Shown here: positions 48,501 through 60,500 of the stretch, one piece after another
How the letters are laid out: the number at the start of each line of letters is the position of its first letter
Position numbering within the stretch: the stretch's first letter is position 1
The notes under the pieces: model-generated
Database searches by the model: none
What the model saw: only the letters and a program-made list of their open reading frames with translations
Told to the model about the DNA's origin: nothing
DNA from: Lytechinus pictus
Lineage: Eukaryota
Length of the DNA: 64,000 nucleotides
NCBI RefSeq assembly: GCF_037042905.1
Contig: NC_087247.1
Span: 14,818,001-14,882,000 of the forward strand
Reading direction: 5' to 3'
Made by a program: the position numbers and the translations under genes

Positions 48501-51500
48501 CAAAACCTTTGTACATCATCTGACAAGTATTACCATTCAAACACTAAGTGCAATACTTATCAACCATCAATCACCATCTGATTGTTATATATAATCCATT
48601 AAAAACCCATATGACTAGAAAGCTTCATCTTTATACACCATACAAACCTGTTATCACAATCTGATCATAATCAATACTTTATGTGCGAAAAGAGTTTAAA
48701 CACAATCTGCAAGCAGAGGTAAGGTATAACATTCTAACTATATGTTTATATGAGGGCCTCATAACACAGAGGTTTGTGATGGAGAGCAAATATGAAAGAA
48801 CACTTCTGATTGGTCCCTGGGTAATATTTTGAACAACGTGTGCATGTAACATTGACCATGATTGGCCATGGTCATTTAGCGATTAATCGCCAGCCTTTGT
48901 GTTAATGAGCCCTAGTATTCAACTATGACACTACATTCACTAGAGTACAGCACCCCGTCTGCTGTTTTTCTTGTTATTGTATTTTTTTATGATAACTTCC
49001 AATATAAAGTTAAAATTTAGATTGCTTATTGATTACTTCATTTCCTATGCTTCATTTTCAAATTACAATTCGATTCATTCCATGTAAAGCATTTAGCTTT
49101 TTGGCAAAAAGTTTTTGAAACAAGCCGTAAAAAAACATAATTTTTCAATTTCAGTGAAATATGATAATCTTCCCTTTGACATGGAGAGGATCGAAGCTTC
49201 ATTTTTTCATAGAGTGCCTAAATTTGGGTGAGAATTAAGAAAATAGATAATGTAACCATTACGTGAAAAAATAGCAAAAATGATGAAAGTTTACAATACC
49301 TCCACAGCAAATCTAATTTCATCACCTTTTTTGTTCAAGGAAGATTATTTTTCTGCGAATTTAGACACTCAAGAGCACATTTCCGCTCTTTTGGTATTTC
49401 ATTTATCTCACTTTTATAAATGTATATCAGATGCAAAAAGAGAAGCTTTGCCATGATTTGTAATTAATTGTTATAAGTCAACTCTGTAGTCTTTACAAAT
49501 ACAAGACCCTGTCTTACAAAAAGTTATGATTGATCCAATCAATCCTAACTATGGAATCTATCAATGTCATAAGGAAATAGGAAATCTAAACACTGTCATT
49601 TATTGACAATGATGCATGTATGAGTATACATCCTATAAAGAACACACTTTGAATGGACATGAGCATTGTAGATGTTGATGTCTTTCCATAGCTAAGAATG
49701 ACTGATTTGATCACAACACTATGATAGATTGGTTCCAGGCTTACCTTTGGTTCGATGAGAATTCCTTTCTCAGTAATCTTTGGTAGTTCTTTTAGGTTGG
49801 TATATAGGAACTCAAACTCCACGTTCCATTGGCCAAGCATGTCACCGCGTAAGGTGTAGATCAACCGCCTATCAAAATTAGAAAATAATATACCACAATC
49901 AAACTCCACATTCCATGTCACCGCGTGAGGTGTAGATTAATCGCCTATCAAAATGAAGAAAAAAAAATTCCATTGGCCAAGAATATATGTCACCTCTTGA
50001 GGTGTACATCAGAATGATATACATACACATCATGGTATTACATAAAGTACACTGATCTCTACCAACTTGCTTTTTACTTGCACCTAGATCACTTCAGCCC
50101 ATAACATGTTACCAATTATTTTGTGCAATACTGCGATGCTCTGCATTTTTGGGAGGTTCCATTTTTCCCATTATGGTAAAATCCTCAATTATGTCACAAT
50201 AACCTTGCTTGAGAAAGATCTAGATACGCAACCACAATCTACATACACCCTAGAAGTAAAACAAGCATTGGCTCAAGCGCATTTATTTACATGTATGAGA
50301 AAACCATGAAGTTCTTACCAGAATTCTCTCTTGGAAAGGAGAATAAAATTGTTTCCCTCCAATATAGATTCATGTTTTCGGATGTAGAATATAGAGTAAA
50401 TAACCACATCACGTCAAGACAAACCATCACTTACTCAGCAACCTAGGAGTTACATGCTGTTTGCCTTGGAGGTGATAGCTTCCCCGATACCTTAACCAAC
50501 AGCGATCACTTCCTTATCATTCTTAAACCTTTGGCGCCAAAGTCACCAATTGGTGCCATGTAATAATTCAACATCGCTACAATGGTATGATCTGAGATAA
50601 GCTTACTTGTCTGTAGCTAGTACGTAACTCTTCTTGTCCGGTGTGACCTGCAAGTGAGCAACGTAGTCCTCTGTATGAGCATATTTTCCCTTGTCTACTT
50701 GGAGGAGGAGAGAGTTGCCGAGAGCCATGGACTTGTTGTAGGCTCGGATGATACCGTCTGCACCGATGTAGCGAGGTTCACGCAGCTTCCGGATCTCAAC
50801 CTCGGATTCTACAACTCTGTTGGGGGGAGAAGTGGAAGAATAGGTTTGGTTTAAGGGCACTTTTGTTGCGCTTTCATTGTGACATCACTCACACGTGATA
50901 ACCCACAGACTACTCAACACCATGCATCAAACACAGTGTTTGTCTTTTGAAGTGATTACAAATCTCATTTAAACACTGTGATCTCACGTATCACAAGTAT
51001 TTGTGTTAGAGCGCCACCTTGTGGTGGAATACTCTGAATAATGTTTATGCGACAATAGTAATTCTCAGGGATAATTCTTCACTTATCAGTGCTGCAGTGA
51101 AGTCATGTGCTGCCTAATAAAGTAAGGTTCAATCATACAACTATTGTGAGGTGTCATTTTTATATTGGCATGGTGGCAGCGGTGGGATTTGTCATTCCTT
51201 TATTGTCATATAGTTCTACTGATAAATCCTCATTTCATCCCCCTGTACATCGGATTCATCATTCAGTTAAATATTTCTTTAATTTTTCAATTCTTATTCA
51301 CGACCACATCATCTTGTATATTTGAAGGAAAAGTATTCGACCAGGAAGCATCAATGATGAGAAACGTTGGTGGAATCTGTACTACGAAACATACAGTTTC
51401 CAGCTTGTGAAAATGGCAATCATTTAGTTTCAGACATGACATGATGTCACATTTGATACAAGACACAATAAGAGCATTTCTATGCTGATCAATAAAATTT

Positions 51501-54500
51501 TGTAAAATTCATTGTGTACTTGATAACAGGTAAAAGAAAAACATGTCTCTACATTTTGAAGTGTGATGCTTTCAAACTGACTGAATTGCTATGACCATAA
51601 TGTCAACGTCCAGTTCACCCTTGAAAGTCTTCAATGTAGAGCTTACCTTCTTATTCCCTCAAAGGTCCCGCTGGCAAAGTCAATGATACCGCCAGTAGGC
51701 TTGGCTACCACTCCAGCCAGACCCTTGCCAACACCCTTGAAGAATCCCTTAGCTCCTTCCTTCTTGGCACCTTCAAATGGATTCTTAACAACGCCACTCA
51801 CACCTTCGTAGAAACCCTGTCATAAAAAAATAATCAAGATGTATTAGATGCATCTTTCTGTTCAGATGGGTAGAAAGCACATTGGACAGACAAACAAGTA
51901 GAATCTTTTGCCTTAGGCATGAGACTCGAACATTAGGGGCTCTTGCTTTTCTCCCTTCACCTCTTTTCTCATGCCTATATAGTGAATGTCAACTTTTTGA
52001 CAACCACATGCAGATCTTGAATAGTCAATTTTTACATGTTTTACTGTTTCTGGAAAATTTTGTAACAGAATAAATAGAGAAAATGAATAAGATGACAATT
52101 GTGCTTCAGACAAAAAACGTTTATGGCAAGGATGATGGTGATAATCACGGTATAATTGATGACAGTTGATGATAATTATTGTCACAATCATTCTAACAAT
52201 ATTGATGATATACCTTCATTCCTACTTACCATAACAAGACCCTTGCCACCTCTGGCTAGACCCTCTTGGAATGTAGCAGGTCTTTGATTGATAGCTTGTT
52301 GTCTCTTCTTCTTATAATCTTCATCCATGGTGAGTGCGGCCAGACCTTTACCCAAGGTTCCAGTGATGCGGGATACAGCTCCTGCTGCACCACCTAGAAT
52401 TAAATAATGTTGATGGTTACATCATCATCATAATTACCGTCATCATTGTTGCCATTATCACCCCCACCACGCCACCACCATGACAATCAGAACAATCGTC
52501 ATCCCCATCATNNNNNNNNNNNNNNNNNNNNNNNNNNNNNNNNNNNNNNNNNNNNNNNNNNNNNNNNNNNNNNNNNNNNNNNNNNNNNNNNNNNNNNNNN
52601 NNNNNNNNNNNNNNNNNNNNNNNNNNNNNNNNNNNNNNNNNNNNNGTCAGGAATTGCGAAATTGATTTTTAGGATGTTATTCAATATATTTAGATAATAT
52701 ACATGCTATACATACCAACTGCATGTCCAAAGAGACTCCTCATACCAAGAGCTACACCCTCAGCAAACTCCTCAGGACCTTGTACAATTCCCTGGTTGGA
52801 TAGAGAAAGAAAAAAAGATTTGTCTGTAAAGAGTATTTCTTAGAAGTTTCAAATTATCCAAATCACATACTATGGAATTTTAACCTTAATACTCCTGGGG
52901 TATTTCTGGTCATTTTATAATTAGATTAGGGGTAGGGGGGAGGGGTGGGTTGATTATGGACCCCTATAAAATGTTGACTGTAGAATGTGTGATCATTATA
53001 AAGATTTACTTATTGGACTTAAAATTCACTCAATCTTTTTATCTTATTTCACATGGTTTAATTACGCTAATCTTTATGGGAAATTAGAATTCAGCTGAAA
53101 ATCTATCAATAAAACCCAGAACTGGAGTATTAGGGCTAAAAGCATTTGAACAATTAATAAAAACACAAACAAGAAGAAATGGGAAAACATAACCTGACAA
53201 GGTTTGCACAAAACGCCAGTTCCTACTCCTCCGATGAAACCAAATGGGTTACCAATCACATCAAACCCAAGAACAAGGACATAGAGCTGTTTGATGGTCT
53301 GATTAAGAGTAATGGACTCACCTGATAAGGTTCATAGAAGAGGTCTTTGACACCTGTTCCGACTCCTCTGACGAAACCAAATGGGTTACCAATCACATCA
53401 AGACCAAGAACGAGAACATAGAGCTGTTTGATGGCCTGATTAGAGTAATGGACTCACCTGATAAGGTTCATAGAAGAGGTCTTTGACACCAGTTCCGACT
53501 CCTCTGACGAAACCAAATGGGTTACCGATCACATCAAGACCAAGAACGAGAACATAGAGCTGTTTGATGGCCTGATTAGAGTAATGGACTCACCTGATAA
53601 GGTTCATAGAAGAGGTCTTTGACACCTGTTCCTACTCCTCTGACGAAACCAAATGGGTTACCAATCACATCAAGACCAAGAACTAGAACATAGAGCTGTT
53701 TGATGGCCTGATTAGAGTAATGGACTCACCTGATAAGGTTCATAGAAGAGGTCTTTGACACCAGTTCCTACTCCTCTGACGAAACCAAATGGGTTACCAA
53801 TCACATCAAGACCAAGAACTAGAACATAGAGCTGTTTGATGGCCTAATTGGAGTAATGGACTCACCTGATAAGGTTCATAGAAGAGGTCTTTGACACCAG
53901 TTCCTACTCCTCTGACGAAACCAAATGGGTTACCAATCACATCAAGACCAAGAACGAGAACATAGAACTGTTTGATGGCCTGATTGGAGTAATGAACTCA
54001 CTTGATAAGGTTCATAGAAGAGGTCTTTGACACCAGTTCCTACTCCTCTGACGAAACCAAATGGGTTACCAATCACATCAAGACCAAGAACGAGAACATA
54101 GAGCTGTTTGATGGCCTGATTAGAGTAATGGACTCACCTGATAAGGTTCATAGAAGAGGTCTTTGACACCTGTTCCTACTCCTCTGACGAAACCAAATGG
54201 GTTACCGATCACATCAAGACCAAGAACGAGAACATAGAGCTGTTTGATGGCCTGATTAGAGTAATGGACTCACCTGATAAGGTTCATAGAAGAGGTCTTT
54301 GACACCTGTTCCTACTCCTCTGACGAAACCAAATGGGTTACCAATCACATCAAGACCAAGAACGAGAACATAGAACTGTTTGATGGCCTGATTGGAGTAA
54401 TGAACTCACTTGATAAGGTTCATAGAAGAGGTCTTTGACACCAGTTCCTACTCCTCTGACGAAACCAAATGGGTTACCAATCACATCAAGACCAAGAACG

Positions 54501-57500
54501 AGAACATAGAGCTGTTTGATGGCCTGATTAGAGTAATGGACTCACCTGATAAGGTTCATAGAAGAGGTCTTTGACACCTGTTCCTACTCCTCTGACGAAA
54601 CCAAATGGGTTACCGATCACATCAAGACCAAGAACGAGAACATAGAGCTGTTTGATGGCCTGATTAGAGTAATGGACTCACCTGATAAGGTTCATAGAAG
54701 AGGTCTTTGACACCTGTTCCTACTCCTCTGACGAAACCAAATGGGTTACCAATCACATCAAGACCAAGAACTAGAACATAGAGCTGTTTGATGGCCTGAT
54801 TAGAGTAATGGACTCACCTGATAAGGTTCATAGAAGAGGTCTTTGACACCAGTTCCTACTCCTCTGACGAAACCAAATGGGTTACCAGTCACATCAAGAC
54901 CAAGAACGAGAACATAGAGCTGTTTGATGGCCTGATTGGAGTAATGGACTCACCTGATATGGTTCATAGAAGAGGTCTTTGACACCAGTTCCTACTCCTC
55001 TGACGAAACCAAATGGGTTACCAATCACATCAAGACCAAGAACGAGGACATAGAGCTGTTTGATGGCCTGATTGGAGTAATGGCGAACTACCTCCGATGA
55101 TAGCTGCTCTGGGCTGTAGAACTGGTACTCTCTCTCAAAGAAACCAAGCCTAGATGGTGTTTCACAAAGATTTAAGAGTGTCTTAAGAAGCATGCTTAAA
55201 CACCAACATGCACATAATGCGGTGTTGTATTACATACAGGGTTCCCTCATAATAATAATAATAATAATAATATAGAGTATTTCTAAAGCGCCAAATCCAC
55301 ATTATGTGCTCACGGCACTGCGAAAAGGAAATAACAGAAAAATAACATGGAGCAGGAAGGGACATGATGTATGGAAGATCATGGTTTGATGCACATTGCA
55401 CAGGTTTTTATTGTCTGGAATCCAACATGGCTGGCTGCCAAATCCACATTAATCATGTGCTCACGGCACTGCGAAAAGGAAATAAGAGAAAAATTACATG
55501 GAGCAGGAAGGGACATGATGTATGGAAGATCATGGATTGATGCACATGCACAGGTTTTTATTGTCTGGAATCCAACATGGCTGCCTGTGAAAACCCTTCA
55601 TATTGCACGCAAATAAGATTCAATTGCAATTCTAAGGGGGTGTTGCAAGAAAATATTTGCGATCAATTGCAAATATTCTGTTGCAATTTTACAACTGATA
55701 TAGATCAACGTTAGCTGTAGCAAATTAGATTAAACTTCTTGTTTCAAGGAGCAAATTAGCAATCAATCACTAATTTGCAATTAACTGCAAGACAATGATT
55801 GATTTAGGGACCAAAAATTGACTTGCAATTGATCGCAAGCTTCTTGCAACACCCCGATCAGTCATGCTTAAATTTTTATGAAACACTTCCAGGTTGAAAG
55901 GAATGGAGACAGTAAATGAATGGGTTAGGAAGACTACATGGATCAATCGTCGCAAGAAATTTCATTCAATACTTTGAAAATCCTTTTCAATCTTCCATAT
56001 CCCAAATTGTTCAGATTTATACTGTTAATACCATACACTATGTAAAAGAAACAGTCTGTCGCTCACAATTTATATACCAATTCAGTTTGAGTGCCATTTA
56101 AATGGTCTTCTTGTAACAGATACTGACACAGGATTGCACTTGAATCAATGCATAATTCATAGTATTTTCTTTTAATTTGGATGGGTCCAGCTATGGTTAA
56201 CATGAGTAAATGTTTTTAATTAGGTAGATGTAAACTGATTTAATGTGTTTTCACTGAAAGCCCAAGAGTCTAAAATTTCAATAAAATAATCCCTCAAAAT
56301 TGGACAGATTCTACTCACTTGAAGATGACATCATCTACGTTGGTCAGGGTGACCCCAACGCTCTGTAGTAGGAGATTGAGGGCGTTCTGACGGGCGTTGG
56401 CCTGGGCACTCAATAAAGACTTATCCTCTTTGCCGGTCTCTGACAGAGAAAAACTCACATGAATCTAAGAAGGAATGGAAAGACAAGGTTTCAGGTATAT
56501 ATCACCATCATCATCATCATAGTAATAATCTTAATAATAATTTCAGAGCTCACAGCTTTTTGAGGAATTACTTCCTGCCGGTACCCATTTTCAACTATTC
56601 AACTTTAGACCTTGATACCCAATAAACTAATCAGATCATTGTTGCTCATATATGAATATTTGGAACAAGTTTAAAGTTAATCCATCGAATGGTTCCTTAG
56701 TCATTGCAAGTATGAAAATTGGACAGCTGGACAGACGTCCAAAAATGCATCCAGCAACCATCTACAGTGGGCAGAGGCATAATCATCTCTGTAGAGGGGA
56801 TGTTGTGGTCTAGTGGTTCTGCCTCACTTCCTTTCATTCAGTAGGTCATGGGTTCAAATTCCAGCTATGGCGTGATTTCCTTCAGCAAGAAATTGACCCA
56901 CATTTTTCTGCACTCAACCCAGGTGAGGTGAATGGGTATCCGGTAGGATTAATTCCTTGAATGCACCGAGCACTGAAAGGCAGTTCAAGCTAAAACGGGG
57001 GTAATAATAATTGTGCGCCTCGGAATAGATTATTTCTAGGTAGATGGACCTATGCATATGCCTATTATTGTTATTGTTATAAGTGAACTTCTTGGATTTT
57101 GTAAAATACTTTTTTTTCTTCTTTTTTAAAGTGCACACCTGTTACCAAAATGTGCATAGCATTTCCATTTATCTGAATGCAGGATAAAAGAGCATTGCTG
57201 ATTAAATACCTTGCTCACGGGCATAGGTGCTGCTGCCGGGGATCGGCACCTTAGACCACTCAGCCACCTCCATTGAAAGAGTGCTCAAGCTAAAGCTTGA
57301 TTAATAACAAATACGCACTGTGGAATAGATTATTTCACTCCCCAGGGAGTGGAAATTGTGCACTTTTCGTGCGGGATTGAAATGAATCCAATGACCGGGG
57401 TAATAATATGCTGTAACGCGCTTTGAGCCATTCTGGGAAAAGCGCTTTATAAAAATTTGCTATTATTATTATTATTTCTAGATAGATGGACTTATGCAAA

Positions 57501-60500
57501 TGCCTGTAACTATTATTGCTATTAGAGAACTTCTTGGATGTTGTATAGTACTCACCTTAAGTGGAGAGAGATGGAATGAATCATAGAAGTTGAAGTCTTT
57601 GGCCAAAGCAACCTTGACATACTCAGCATCGGCTAACTCTAATCTTATTAGCTCCTTGTCCAACTCAAGCAGAGCAACCTATAAATAAAACAACAAAAAT
57701 ACTTCTTGATGACACATGGAAAGTAAATCTCAATCACATGATTGTTTGAGAGCAGAGAAGTCATCAGACATTTGTGTTATCTGACACAAAATTTTCTAAT
57801 GACTTTTGAAACACAAGGACCTGGTATTAATAATCTTGTCACTTAATTACACCAACACACTAGTCTCTTATCTTGAGTAATTAACAAAACAAAAACAGAT
57901 TTTATTAGATAAAATTGCAGATCAGAAGTACAAAAAGGGTAAATCATTTTATATCCTATACAAAAACAAAGGAATTAAGTGCTTTTAATAAGATGATATA
58001 ATCATTATTATTTTCAATGTCATTATTTTCCACATCTTCTTTGTGTGTAAGATGACTGAAACACCCTCCTTTTGACATCTACAAAATCATTCTCTTCTGC
58101 ATCCAGCTATTCTTTATTAGTAAACTTGCAAGAACCATGGGAGTGTTTCACAAAGCAAATAGTGTTTTTCACCTGCTAATTTGTTCTCAGCCAATCAGAG
58201 GCAAGGATTTCAGTAGCTTATAACAATTGACAGTGAAAATTAACTATTTGTTTTGGTAACACGCTCCTCAGATTTCCATCCTAACCCTATCAATGACTTG
58301 TTCTTCATCCGATTGGAAGATGGCTGCTATGTTGGCCAGGAATCCCATGTCCAGTTTGACCGCCATCTCTTGGACCAAAAGCTTGAGGTACTTGATCTGT
58401 TTGACCGTACTGTGCTCCGAGAAACGAACCATCATGCTGAACTCTAGAAGCTGTTTAGGGGCTGAGGACCAAAAAAAAAAACACACAAATTATTTATATA
58501 TTTTCAGATTTTTTATTTTCCATTTTGTAAAATTGGCTTCGCTAAAATATAATTTATATTTAGGGTCAATGAACTTAGATCATGTTGGGGGAATCATTTT
58601 TTTACTTCCAGATTTTTGTCAGGCTTGGTTTATTCAACGCCGCTGTAGTTTATTTACCAGAAAATATGGTATTTGTAGTTATATAATTTCTACAGAAATC
58701 AAACAGATCAGCAACTATTTCAAAGCTTTGCAAGACTCTTTTGTCATAATGTCTAGAGATTGGAACAGACTGCCTGCAGATTTTAAAGATTCTCTGTATC
58801 TGGAATCATAAAAAAAAAGTCAAATATGATGACATTCAATTCATATCACATGCTATTCCCCACATCTCAAGTAAGTGAGATGCATCAACACTTTCATATT
58901 TTTTTAAAGCAAATGTAAATATTCTCACTATGAATAAATGACTAATACAACAAAACAACAAACAATATCCAATTCTGTGTAGTATAAAAAGTCTACCTAC
59001 CATTCTCAGCTGCCACTGTCTTAGGGAGGGGTACGGGAGCCACCGGGGTAGGGAAGATAGCAGCCGGCATCTGATTGTCCACCTGTAGTCTGTTGATGGT
59101 CAGATGAAGCTGAAGCTGATGCTTAGAGGTACGCACTTGGGCCCACACACCCGAATGGTAGGTACGTCTTAGCTGCTGCTTCTTAGGGGCCAGCATCAAC
59201 ATACGTCCATAGTCAACCTGTGGATAGACAAGACATGCATGAGGTTTACTGAAATGCGATGAAAAAAAGCCGTAAATGAACAGGAATCTAGATTGACAAT
59301 GAAATGATGAATAACTGTTGAAAGTTGGTACATGTACATCTCTAGCAAAGTGGCTAAGAGGGTGTTGGAAGAAAATTAGTAATAAAAATACTACATAACA
59401 GATATGAGGCGCTTACTGCCGGTGTTTCTAAGCGCACTGTGTTCTGATTATGGTTTATACTTGGGAGAGGAAAAAAAAATGACACAACTATTAAAACAAC
59501 TAATACTAATAATCAGAACTGGTGTGCACCTACATAATCAATTGCATATTTCTGTTGCAATTTTATAAATGAGGGATCAATTTTAGCTGTAGAAAATCAG
59601 TTTACACTTCTTGTGGTAAGAAACAGATCAGCTATCAATTGCAAATTGCAATCAATTGAAAGACATATTATTAATTTTGGGTCCCTAAATAGATTTATGA
59701 TTGATAGTAGGTTTTTTGTAACACCCCATAAGATTTTATCAAGGTACCGTACCTCCATGCCATAATCTAACTTGTAAACTCTGGGTGGAAGATCCTTCTG
59801 ATCACTGGCATCTAGTCCTGCCTTGACGAATCCTTCCTCTAAGCTCTTCATCTCCTTCATGCTGAGATCCTTGTATCGACGACGGACCTTGTTCTGCCAG
59901 ATGATCCCAGAGCTGCCAACGAGAAAGAGACAAAATGATAATGNNNNNNNNNNNNNNNNNNNNNNNNNNNNNNNNNNNNNNNNNNNNNNNNNNNNNNNNN
60001 NNNNNNNNNNNNNNNNNNNNNNNNNNNNNNNNNNNNNNNNNNNNNNNNNNNNNNNNNNNNNNNNNNNNNNNNNNNNNNNNNNNNNNNNNNNNNNNNNNNN
60101 NNNNNNNNNNNNNNNNNNNNNNNNNNNNNNNNNNNNNNNNNNNNNNNNNNNNNNNNNNNNNNNNNNNNNNNNNNNNNNNNNNNNNNNNNNNNNNNNNNNN
60201 NNNNNNNNNNNNNNNNNNNNNNNNNNNNNNNNNNNNNNNNNNNNNNNNNNNNNNNNNNNNNNNNNNNNNNNNNNNNGGTGTTGATGACAAAGATGATGAT
60301 GATGATGATGATAATGATATTGATGATAATGGTGATGATTATGATAGCGGTGGTGATAATGATATGATGATGATGATTGTGGTGATGATGATGATGGTAA
60401 TAATATGTTTACAAAGTACTTAGAATCATTCCGATTGCATAAAGTGTTTTTGAAAAGCTGAGTATTAACAATATCTAATGATAATGGCTACCTAACCAAG

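What the first reader, a model, noticed from the sequence alone, without database searches (positions are those of the whole stretch)
53322..54953. Every array unit hides an in-frame 114-nt cassette exon, 22 nt from the next: a possible nascent mutually-exclusive/expandable exon bank
Seen: each unit reads gtgagtc-cattactc(t/c)aat(c/t)AG|GCC ATC...TAT CAG|gtgagt. The AG-to-GT segment is 114 nt = 38 codons ([38 protein letters not shown]), phase 0 at both ends like the host junction, with no stop in any of the 12 copies (for example 54682-54795). Established: 22 nt between a donor and the next acceptor is too short for a spliceosomal intron, the same steric constraint known from some mutually exclusive exon pairs. 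Only non-adjacent copies (introns of 22+136k nt) could be included together. Spacer variants preserve the signals: CAG->TAG is still YAG, GTGAGTC->GTGAGTT keeps the donor, and TCC->TCT creates a CTAAT branch-like motif (though very near the AG). Inference: isoforms could carry extra repeats of the hydrophobic/amphipathic segment at the start of the ATG2_C-type membrane-binding region. Caveat: the acceptor has only a short pyrimidine tract.
Basis: partly seen in the sequence, partly recalled or inferred. Interest (0 to 1): 0.75.

Follow-up and report, generated by a model that had tools for sequence, protein, structure and literature searches.

The report
Exon-end repeat array in urchin VPS13A
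An intron of the painted sea urchin's VPS13A-like lipid-transfer gene begins with 12 extra tandem copies of the preceding exon's end plus its splice signal; this is a known kind of repeat that is most likely spliced out unused, although the copies vary almost only at silent sites, which RNA data should follow up.

Summary
On the minus strand, 13 near-identical 136-nt units (55082-53315) and one decayed 14th unit follow each other head to tail. Unit 1 is the real end of a VPS13A-like exon in Lytechinus pictus. Each unit holds 15 exonic nt, then 114 nt, then gtgagtc. All 12 intronic copies keep an open 114-nt frame between a YAG and a GT, 22 nt apart.

The "acceptor" is the exon's own Gln codon, not a new signal. 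The best reading is a boundary-spanning minisatellite of the human F7 intron 7 / IFI6 type, with the first donor in use. All 14 RefSeq isoforms checked join EPYQ to GIVQ and none contains EPYQAIKQ. A mutually exclusive bank fails by definition: unit 1 cannot be skipped, and 10 of 13 units encode the same peptide.

Cassette use is not excluded:
- The donors are perfect.
- The acceptors score like mid-range real ones.
- The same 114 nt is a free-standing exon in a vertebrate VPS13A.
- Variation among the intronic copies is strongly synonymous (pN/pS 0.09, P about 0.02), unlike a control array in TMEM209.

The scan has noted many similar arrays elsewhere in this genome. No RNA reads could be examined.

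The parts
54954..55149 (-). Real 196-nt coding exon of the VPS13A-like gene. Its last 129 nt (55082-54954) are the exonic part of array unit 1.
   Evidence: The translation is identical to L. pictus RefSeq VPS13A-like isoforms. tblastn with the crinoid VPS13A protein P0003 maps here. Acceptor tctag|G at 55150/55149.
54952..54953 (-). Authentic 5' splice site GT (CAG|GTGAGT), the first of 13 tandem donors
   Evidence: All RefSeq isoforms read join EPYQ directly to GIVQGPEEF. The spliced alignment picks donor 54954 and acceptor 52791.
53315..54946 (-). Twelve intronic 136-nt units (units 2-13), each with a 114-nt open segment. The segments are 54931-54818, 54795-54682, 54659-54546, 54523-54410, 54387-54274, 54251-54138, 54115-54002, 53979-53866, 53843-53730, 53707-53594, 53571-53458 and 53435-53322.
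   Evidence: Mean pairwise difference is 2.5%. Units 4-6 and 7-9 differ at 1 of 408 nt. Units 3=11, 4=7 and 5=8 are identical.
53179..53314 (-). Degenerate 14th unit at the 3' edge of the array: 88% identical, 1-nt insertion in the spacer, 9-nt deletion, weak donor CAG|GTTATG
   Evidence: Donor PWM score is 3.8 bits, the 5th percentile of real donors.
52716..52791 (-). Next real exon (GIVQGPEEF...), the acceptor for the 2162-nt intron that holds the array
56319..56464 (-). Preceding real exon. It ends in phase 2 (..VIFK split AA|G).
   Evidence: The junction IFK|LGFF is present in the RefSeq proteins.
50606..50818 (-). Downstream exon with the Pfam VPS13_C match that identifies the gene family
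   Evidence: PF25037, E 1.4e-17; same domain on the RefSeq protein.

Best explanation
This is a boundary-spanning intronic minisatellite in the VPS13A-like gene of Lytechinus pictus.

Origin (inferred): A 136-bp segment covering the last 129 nt of an exon and the first 7 nt of the intron was duplicated in tandem. It was later amplified and kept homogeneous by unequal exchange. This leaves 12 young copies, one decayed edge copy and a 408-bp higher-order block.

Splicing (annotation-level evidence): The spliceosome uses the first, authentic donor, the one nearest the exon's real acceptor. The whole array is removed as part of a 2162-nt intron.

The copies look like 'cassette exons' because they are recent copies of coding sequence. 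The AG in front of each is the exon's own CAG codon. The frame is open because the copies are only about 2.5% diverged. Each pseudo-acceptor's branch-point and pyrimidine region lies on top of the previous unit's perfect U1 site, which should keep it masked (inferred).

The synonymous bias among copies is left as either chance or silent polymorphism of the real exon seeded into the array by unequal crossing-over in a highly polymorphic species (inferred, untested).
For: - Array anatomy, with unit 1 being the exon end.
- The unit is unique to this locus.
- The paralogue on contig 4 has the same fused exon and no array. A related marine echinoderm contig also has no duplication after the donor.
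- Identical units, a 408-bp block duplicated with 1 difference, and a more diverged edge unit all point to ongoing unequal exchange. Four-gamete violations among sites agree.
- The window lies on the L. pictus chromosome carrying XP_063952525.1 (contig length 82,431,108).
- 14 L. pictus RefSeq isoforms, and the L. variegatus, S. purpuratus and Diadema proteins, all have one copy and the EPYQ|GIVQ junction.
- Using any later donor hits a stop 19 codons past the junction.
- Precedents exist. In human F7 IVS7, a 37-bp VNTR has its first unit spanning the exon-intron junction and its downstream identical donors stay silent (PMC1557585). IFI6 has a similar minisatellite (PMC4526556).
- Earlier scan notes list many such arrays in this genome (leads only).
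Against: - Variation among the intronic copies is not neutral-looking. In the 114 nt, 7 of 9 variable sites are synonymous (P 0.001-0.004). Without the two unit-1-only sites it is 5 of 7 (P 0.018). pN/pS is 0.09.
- A control array in TMEM209 on the same chromosome shows a neutral pattern: 5 synonymous of 19 against 24% expected.
- The donors outscore all 38 real donors of the gene, and the acceptors fall within the range of real ones.
- All 12 intronic units share two silent states (T35, T122) not found in this haplotype's unit 1. This gives no sign of recent seeding from unit 1.
- RefSeq models may miss junctions that map to many repeat units.
Confidence: 0.62

Rival explanations
1. Working cassette exons. 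Non-neighbouring copies are spliced in, in 114-nt steps. This gives VPS13A isoforms with one or more extra copies of the 38-residue segment just before the helical C-terminal region, and purifying selection on the translated copies keeps them intact.
For: - pN/pS is 0.09 among the intronic copies and the synonymous excess has P about 0.002-0.02.
- The TMEM209 control array, whose units cannot form in-frame exons, varies neutrally.
- Donors score 12.07 bits, above every real donor. Acceptors score 4.9 bits, the 38th percentile of real ones.
- Phase is 0-0 and the length is 114 nt.
- The same segment is an autonomous exon in a vertebrate orthologue.
- Introns of 294 nt or more fall within this gene's range, which starts at 287 nt.
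Against: - No EPYQAIKQ in the 14 RefSeq isoforms read, or in the 985 homologues and 86 short fragments searched.
- About 9% of random intronic AGs score as well as these acceptors.
- Each acceptor's branch and pyrimidine region overlaps the preceding perfect donor (inference).
- The segment is 100% conserved across four echinoid genera, so a tandem insertion is likely to be harmful.
- Very recent copy-number change (identical units) fits a neutral VNTR better than a tuned device.
- The sample is small, only 7-9 variable sites. P rises to 0.03-0.11 if part of the variation comes from the selected real exon.
Confidence: 0.15
2. Splicing noise. Copies are included, or later donors used, at a low level. 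This yields aberrant or NMD-targeted transcripts with no function, and the array is a mildly costly by-product.
For: Strong decoy donors and usable acceptors. Later donors give premature stops. In IFI6 some downstream repeat donors are used (PMC4526556). In F7 the pseudo-sites are functional once the first is removed (PMC1557585).
Against: In F7 the downstream sites are not used at all while the first is intact. No annotated isoform shows it. It does not explain the synonymous bias.
Confidence: 0.18
3. Assembly artefact. The repeat number or the array itself is a mis-assembly.
For: An N gap lies 670 nt beyond the array's decayed edge unit, at 52512-52645. Repeat copy numbers are error-prone in assemblies.
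Against: There are 10 distinct unit sequences arranged in a higher-order pattern, with a decayed edge unit and exact 136-nt register throughout. No gap lies inside the array.
Confidence: 0.04

Closest known systems
Human F7 intron 7 37-bp VNTR (PMC1557585)
   Same: A tandem array whose first unit spans the exon-intron junction, so the authentic donor is followed by several identical donors. The most upstream one is used and the rest stay silent.
   Different: The unit here is 136 nt, not 37. It carries 129 nt of coding sequence, including a protosplice AG, so each unit also looks like a complete in-frame 114-nt exon. There are 13 donors here against 5-9 in F7. The donors here match the consensus perfectly.
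Human IFI6 (6-16) exon 2 / intron 2 minisatellite (Turri et al. 1995, cited in PMC4526556)
   Same: A junction-spanning minisatellite that supplies multiple splice donors.
   Different: In IFI6 two downstream donors are used and give in-frame isoforms. Here any later donor gives a stop after 19 codons, so only acceptor-plus-donor use of a whole unit could stay in frame.
Mutually exclusive exon clusters born by tandem exon duplication (PMC6071210, PMC5740500); steric exclusion by a too-short intron, as in alpha-tropomyosin exons 2/3 (from my own knowledge)
   Same: Tandem homologous exon-sized units in phase 0-0, with neighbours too close to be spliced to each other.
   Different: There is no substitution: unit 1 is fused to constitutive sequence. 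There is almost no peptide diversity. The spacers are 22 nt with no real intron. There is no transcript evidence.
Other junction-spanning donor arrays noted by this scan in the same genome (TMEM209, MAM-domain gene, FARP, kringle gene)
   Same: Exon end plus donor amplified inside the following intron. I confirmed the TMEM209 array.
   Different: The TMEM209 unit is 82 nt with about 48 exonic nt, is older (88% matches, with indels) and varies neutrally. The VPS13A array is younger, carries a whole exon-equivalent and shows a silent-site bias.

Membership tests
Boundary-spanning intronic minisatellite (F7 IVS7 / IFI6 type) | Head-to-tail array whose first unit spans the exon-intron junction | tested here: met
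   Unit 1 (55082-54947) is the exon's last 129 nt plus gtgagtc, and units 2-13 follow in exact 136-nt register.
Boundary-spanning intronic minisatellite (F7 IVS7 / IFI6 type) | Every unit repeats the 5' splice site | tested here: met
   13 donors: 11 CAG|GTGAGT and 2 CAA|GTGAGT. Scores are 12.07 and 9.18 bits against a mean of 8.1 for real donors.
Boundary-spanning intronic minisatellite (F7 IVS7 / IFI6 type) | The most upstream donor is the one used in mRNA | tested here: inconclusive
   All 14 RefSeq isoforms read, and the orthologues, have EPYQ|GIVQ. This is annotation-level evidence only; no reads were seen.
Boundary-spanning intronic minisatellite (F7 IVS7 / IFI6 type) | Copy number varies among individuals (VNTR) | not testable with these tools
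   Only one haplotype is available. Identical units and a 408-bp block with 1 difference suggest recent change.
Mutually exclusive exon cluster | One and only one exon of the cluster is included per mRNA (PMC6071210) | tested here: not met
   Unit 1 is contiguous with the constitutive 5' part of the exon and has no intron before it. Any copy would therefore be added, not swapped.
Mutually exclusive exon cluster | The alternative exons encode different peptide variants | tested here: not met
   10 of 13 units encode the identical 38 residues. The only variants are I>T (one unit) and L>F (two units).
Cassette exon | Open, frame-preserving exon between an AG and a GT | tested here: met
   114 nt, phase 0-0, no stop in 12 of 12 copies.
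Cassette exon | Functional 3' splice site (branch point, pyrimidine tract) with a flanking intron of workable length | tested here: inconclusive
   A PWM built from 39 real acceptors of this gene gives 4.9 bits. That is the 38th percentile of real acceptors and the 91st of 2074 decoy AGs. The 22-nt neighbour gap is too short; 158 nt or more is available only by skipping units. The region overlaps the previous donor.
Cassette exon | Seen in transcripts | tested here: not met
   No EPYQAIKQ in the RefSeq isoforms, the homologues or the short fragments. No retrocopy with either junction. RNA reads could not be searched.
VPS13 (VPS13A/C-like) host gene | VPS13 domains and orthology | tested here: met
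   Pfam VPS13_C, E 1.4e-17, in exon 50606-50884. More than 50 exons align to the crinoid VPS13A over 102 kb.

The most novel reading that the evidence does not exclude
The intronic copies are real, selectively maintained cassette exons. Sea urchin VPS13A could then be made with a variable number of extra 38-residue modules at the junction between its lipid groove and its C-terminal membrane-binding helices, from a copy-number-variable exon array in which neighbours exclude each other sterically. The same 114 nt is an autonomous exon in vertebrates, and the copies show pN/pS of about 0.09.
Probability: 0.13. Interest if true: 0.8.

Novelty: new member of a known kind. Interest (0 to 1): 0.42.

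Why it matters
As a silent array, it is one more natural case of a gene tolerating a dozen perfect decoy splice donors. It is also an unusually stringent one. Each decoy comes with a full exon body, a usable-looking acceptor and a consensus donor, inside a highly conserved, disease-relevant lipid-transfer gene. That makes it a good natural substrate for testing how first-donor choice and pseudo-exon suppression work outside mammals.

If the silent-site bias is real, there are two possibilities. Either selection acts on translated copies, which would be a new way to build length-variable proteins. Or exchange with the functional exon shapes variation in such arrays, which would be a measurable case of concerted evolution between an exon and its intronic copies.

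Tried and rejected
- **Pfam on single exons.** No hit for the repeated exon. Pfam's ATG_C model does not match the RefSeq C-terminus either, so the 'ATG2_C' label could not be confirmed by a family scan.
- **Structure of the native region.** An AlphaFold model of P0231:2890-3140 with a 39-sequence alignment gave mean pLDDT 38.5. It was unusable, so I say nothing about what the 38 residues fold into.
- **Repeat-containing isoform.** I did not build, fold or search a joined (spliced) protein carrying an extra copy, because it has no reference.
- **Orthologous DNA.** S. purpuratus was not on record.
- **Same-species fragments.** The 65-aa search found no fragments from this species, so there is no polymorphism or transcript information.
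- **Remaining isoforms.** Three members of the RefSeq isoform cluster could not be listed.
- **Retrocopies.** A search for retrocopies preserving either splice junction found nothing.
- **Second control array.** The kringle-gene array is too diverged and too short to serve as a control.
- **Alternative donor rejected.** A hidden upstream donor (GAG|GTAGTT at about 55095) could in principle let copies replace unit 1. It scores at the 11th percentile of real donors and would delete conserved residues.
- **Indirect selection rejected.** Selection acting through array-to-exon gene conversion seems too weak to produce the bias (reasoning only).
Full report
**What is there.** The finding lies on the minus strand. 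Tandem Repeats Finder reports one array at 53216-55083 with period 136, 13.7 copies, 97% matches and no indels. Cutting at CATTACTC gives 13 units of exactly 136 nt, starting at 55082, 54946 ... 53450, and a 14th degenerate unit at 53314-53179.

Each unit has three parts: 15 nt (cat tac tcY aat cag), then 114 nt, then gtgagtc. Unit 1 is not a copy. Its first 129 nt are the end of a real 196-nt exon (55149-54954), and its gtgagtc is the start of the real intron. So the array arose by tandem duplication of a segment that straddles the exon-intron junction. The 'acceptor' AG in front of each 114-nt segment is the exon's own Asn-Gln codons (AAT CAG).

All 12 intronic 114-nt segments are open and in phase 0 at both ends, with YAG before and GT after, 22 nt apart.

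**Host gene and organism.**
- A downstream exon (50606-50884) matches Pfam VPS13_C at E 1.4e-17.
- The nearest full-length relative in the representative library is the crinoid Anneissia japonica VPS13A-like protein. It aligns to more than 50 exons over about 102 kb of this chromosome.
- A word search seeded with that protein returned XP_063952525.1, VPS13A-like isoform X3 of Lytechinus pictus, on a contig of 82,431,108 bases. That is exactly the length of the contig holding this window. Its local sequence is identical to the window's exons.
- The unit occurs only here in the 812-Mb assembly.
- A VPS13 paralogue on contig 4 has the same fused exon and no array.

**History of the array.**
- Units 2-13 differ from each other by 2.5% on average, and from unit 1 by 3.3%.
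- Units 3=11, 4=7 and 5=8 are identical. The block of units 4-6 differs from units 7-9 at 1 of 408 nt.
- The unit at the 3' edge is only 88% identical, with a 1-nt insertion, a 9-nt deletion and a weak GTTATG donor.
- Pairs of variable sites show all four combinations.

This is the usual picture of an array homogenised by unequal exchange, with a decayed edge unit. It implies very recent copy-number change.

**Which splice sites are used.** All 14 L. pictus RefSeq isoforms that could be listed join EPYQ directly to GIVQGPEEF and have a single copy of the segment. The same holds for the L. variegatus, S. purpuratus and Diadema proteins. None contains EPYQAIKQ. Three isoforms of the cluster could not be listed. 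Use of any later donor runs into a stop 19 codons after the junction.

This is annotation-level evidence. Junction reads that map to many repeat units may be discarded by pipelines, so it argues against frequent inclusion but not against rare inclusion. No RNA reads could be searched. The protein collections hold no short fragments from this species, and the genome holds no retrocopy with either junction.

**Could the copies be spliced in?** I mapped 37 introns of this gene by spliced alignment and added two acceptors and one donor read by eye. From these I built position weight matrices.

| Site | Score | Comparison |
|---|---|---|
| Array donor CAG\|GTGAGT | 12.07 bits | above all 38 real donors |
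| Array donor CAA\|GTGAGT | 9.18 bits | 63rd percentile of real donors |
| Pseudo-acceptors | 4.9 bits (range 3.3-5.9) | 38th percentile of 39 real acceptors (leave-one-out) |
| Pseudo-acceptors against decoys | 4.9 bits | 91st percentile of 2074 intronic decoy AGs, so about 9% of random AGs do as well |

The TCC>TCT 'branch-like' variant lowers the acceptor score slightly rather than raising it. The shortest real intron in the gene is 287 nt. Skipping one unit gives 158 nt and skipping two gives 294 nt.

The model is small and cannot decide the matter. It shows only that the sites are not disqualified.

Against use, by inference from the known footprints of U1 and U2AF/U2: the only plausible branch point (cttAt, 26 nt upstream) and the pyrimidine stretch of each acceptor lie within and next to the perfect donor of the preceding unit. 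Bound U1 should therefore mask every pseudo-acceptor, whether or not the preceding unit is included.

Three predicted proteins from other animals (P0058, P0060, P0072) carry 28-56 unrelated residues exactly between HYSKQ and AIKQ. The DNA of one, a teleost-like contig (L035), shows a canonical gt...ag intron of 168 nt at that point and another after EPYQ. So in at least some vertebrate VPS13A genes the same 114 nt is a free-standing phase 0-0 exon. In the sea urchin gene and its paralogue the upstream intron is absent, and the CAG|G is a bare protosplice site.

**The silent-site bias.**
- Within the 114 nt, 9 sites vary among the 13 units and 7 are synonymous. The neutral expectation is 24-30%, giving P = 0.001-0.004.
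- Two of the seven separate unit 1 from all the others, and could be silent changes in the selected real exon. Without them the count is 5 of 7 (P = 0.018).
- Among units 2-13, pS = 0.070 and pN = 0.006, so pN/pS = 0.09.
- The two singletons in intronic copies are non-silent in the exon's frame (I>T, and CAG>TAG in the spacer), as new neutral mutations would be.
- As a control I analysed a junction-spanning array in TMEM209 on the same chromosome, which an earlier scan note pointed to. It has an 82-nt unit and 36.6 copies, and its units cannot form in-frame exons. Its exon-derived 48 nt carry 19 variant types, of which 5 are synonymous. That matches the 24% expected.

The bias is therefore not a general property of such arrays. 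It may reflect three things:
1. Selection on translated copies.
2. Silent polymorphism of the real exon seeded into the array by unequal crossing-over in a very polymorphic species.
3. Chance in a small sample. P rises to 0.03-0.11 if about 40% of the variation is expected to be silent, and many arrays were inspected by this scan.

Against the second possibility, all 12 intronic units share two silent states that this haplotype's unit 1 lacks. I cannot separate the three with the data available.

**Why it is not a mutually exclusive bank.** Mutually exclusive clusters include one and only one exon of the array (PMC6071210). Here unit 1 has no intron in front of it and cannot be left out, so a copy could only be added. 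Ten of 13 units encode the same 38 residues, so there is nothing to choose between. The segment is identical in four echinoid genera, which suggests that a tandem insertion there would be costly. VPS13 proteins are known to have grown by duplicating whole groove domains of about 500 residues, not short segments (PMC7613979). Among the 150 best homologues listed, the entries I read that had two matched stretches are intron read-throughs or ordinary spliced fragments, not duplications.

**Comparison with what is known.** The closest known case is the human F7 intron 7 minisatellite. Its first unit spans the exon-intron junction, and the following identical donors stay silent because the most upstream one is always chosen (PMC1557585). 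IFI6 is a second case, where two downstream repeat donors are used (PMC4526556). Earlier notes of this scan list many such arrays in this same genome. I treated them as leads and checked only TMEM209.

What is particular here is the unit: it is a complete exon-equivalent with a consensus donor, in the most conserved part of VPS13A, and it shows a silent-site bias.

**Verdict.**
- Observation: confirmed.
- Best explanation: a junction-spanning minisatellite spliced out through the first donor (0.62).
- Rivals: low-level noisy use (0.18), selected cassette use (0.15), mis-assembly (0.04).
- Novelty: a new member of a known kind.

It is moderately interesting as a natural test of donor choice and pseudo-exon suppression, and because the silent-site bias is unexplained and cheap to test with RNA and population data.

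The structure model of the native region failed (pLDDT 38.5). The joined repeat-containing protein was not built or searched, because it has no reference. The N runs were left as they are.

Noticed in passing
L035:840-1180 (Logan contig ERR3332459_171972), compared with window 55053-55082: In a teleost-like VPS13A, a 168-nt GT-AG intron sits exactly where the sea urchin exon reads AAT CAG|GCC. The 114-nt segment is therefore a free-standing phase 0-0 exon there. The sea urchin gene and its paralogue lack this intron, through either loss or vertebrate gain at a protosplice site.
   Followed up: partly
L037:1845-4854 (G000:C3:30860844-30863853): TMEM209 junction-spanning array: 82-nt unit, 36.6 copies, 88% matches. 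Its exon-derived part varies neutrally (5 synonymous of 19 variant types). The 9 nt GTTAGTTCA at the donor showed no variant in the 33 units extracted.
   Followed up: partly
window 55301-55595: A two-copy tandem duplication of about 150 bp (92-96% identical) in the intron upstream of the repeated exon.
   Followed up: no
L017 (G000:C4:12882500-12885500), minus strand: A VPS13 paralogue exon (58% identical) with the same boundaries. Its following intron is filled with a long ATG/GAT-type microsatellite, and the preceding intron holds a tRNA-like SINE-looking element.
   Followed up: no
window 56319-57678: Two exons (about 57481-57678 and 56319-56464) are present in the sea urchin proteins but found no counterpart in the tblastn alignment with the crinoid VPS13A. 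This may be a more variable linker region.
   Followed up: no
window 52512-52645 and 59944-60276: Two N runs (134 and 333 nt) inside introns of the gene.
   Followed up: no
L019 / L018 (Tara Oceans and another marine metagenome contig): A marine metagenome contig carries the orthologous exon of a related echinoderm: 96% identical protein, about 80% identical DNA with nearly all differences silent, and no duplication after the donor.
   Followed up: partly
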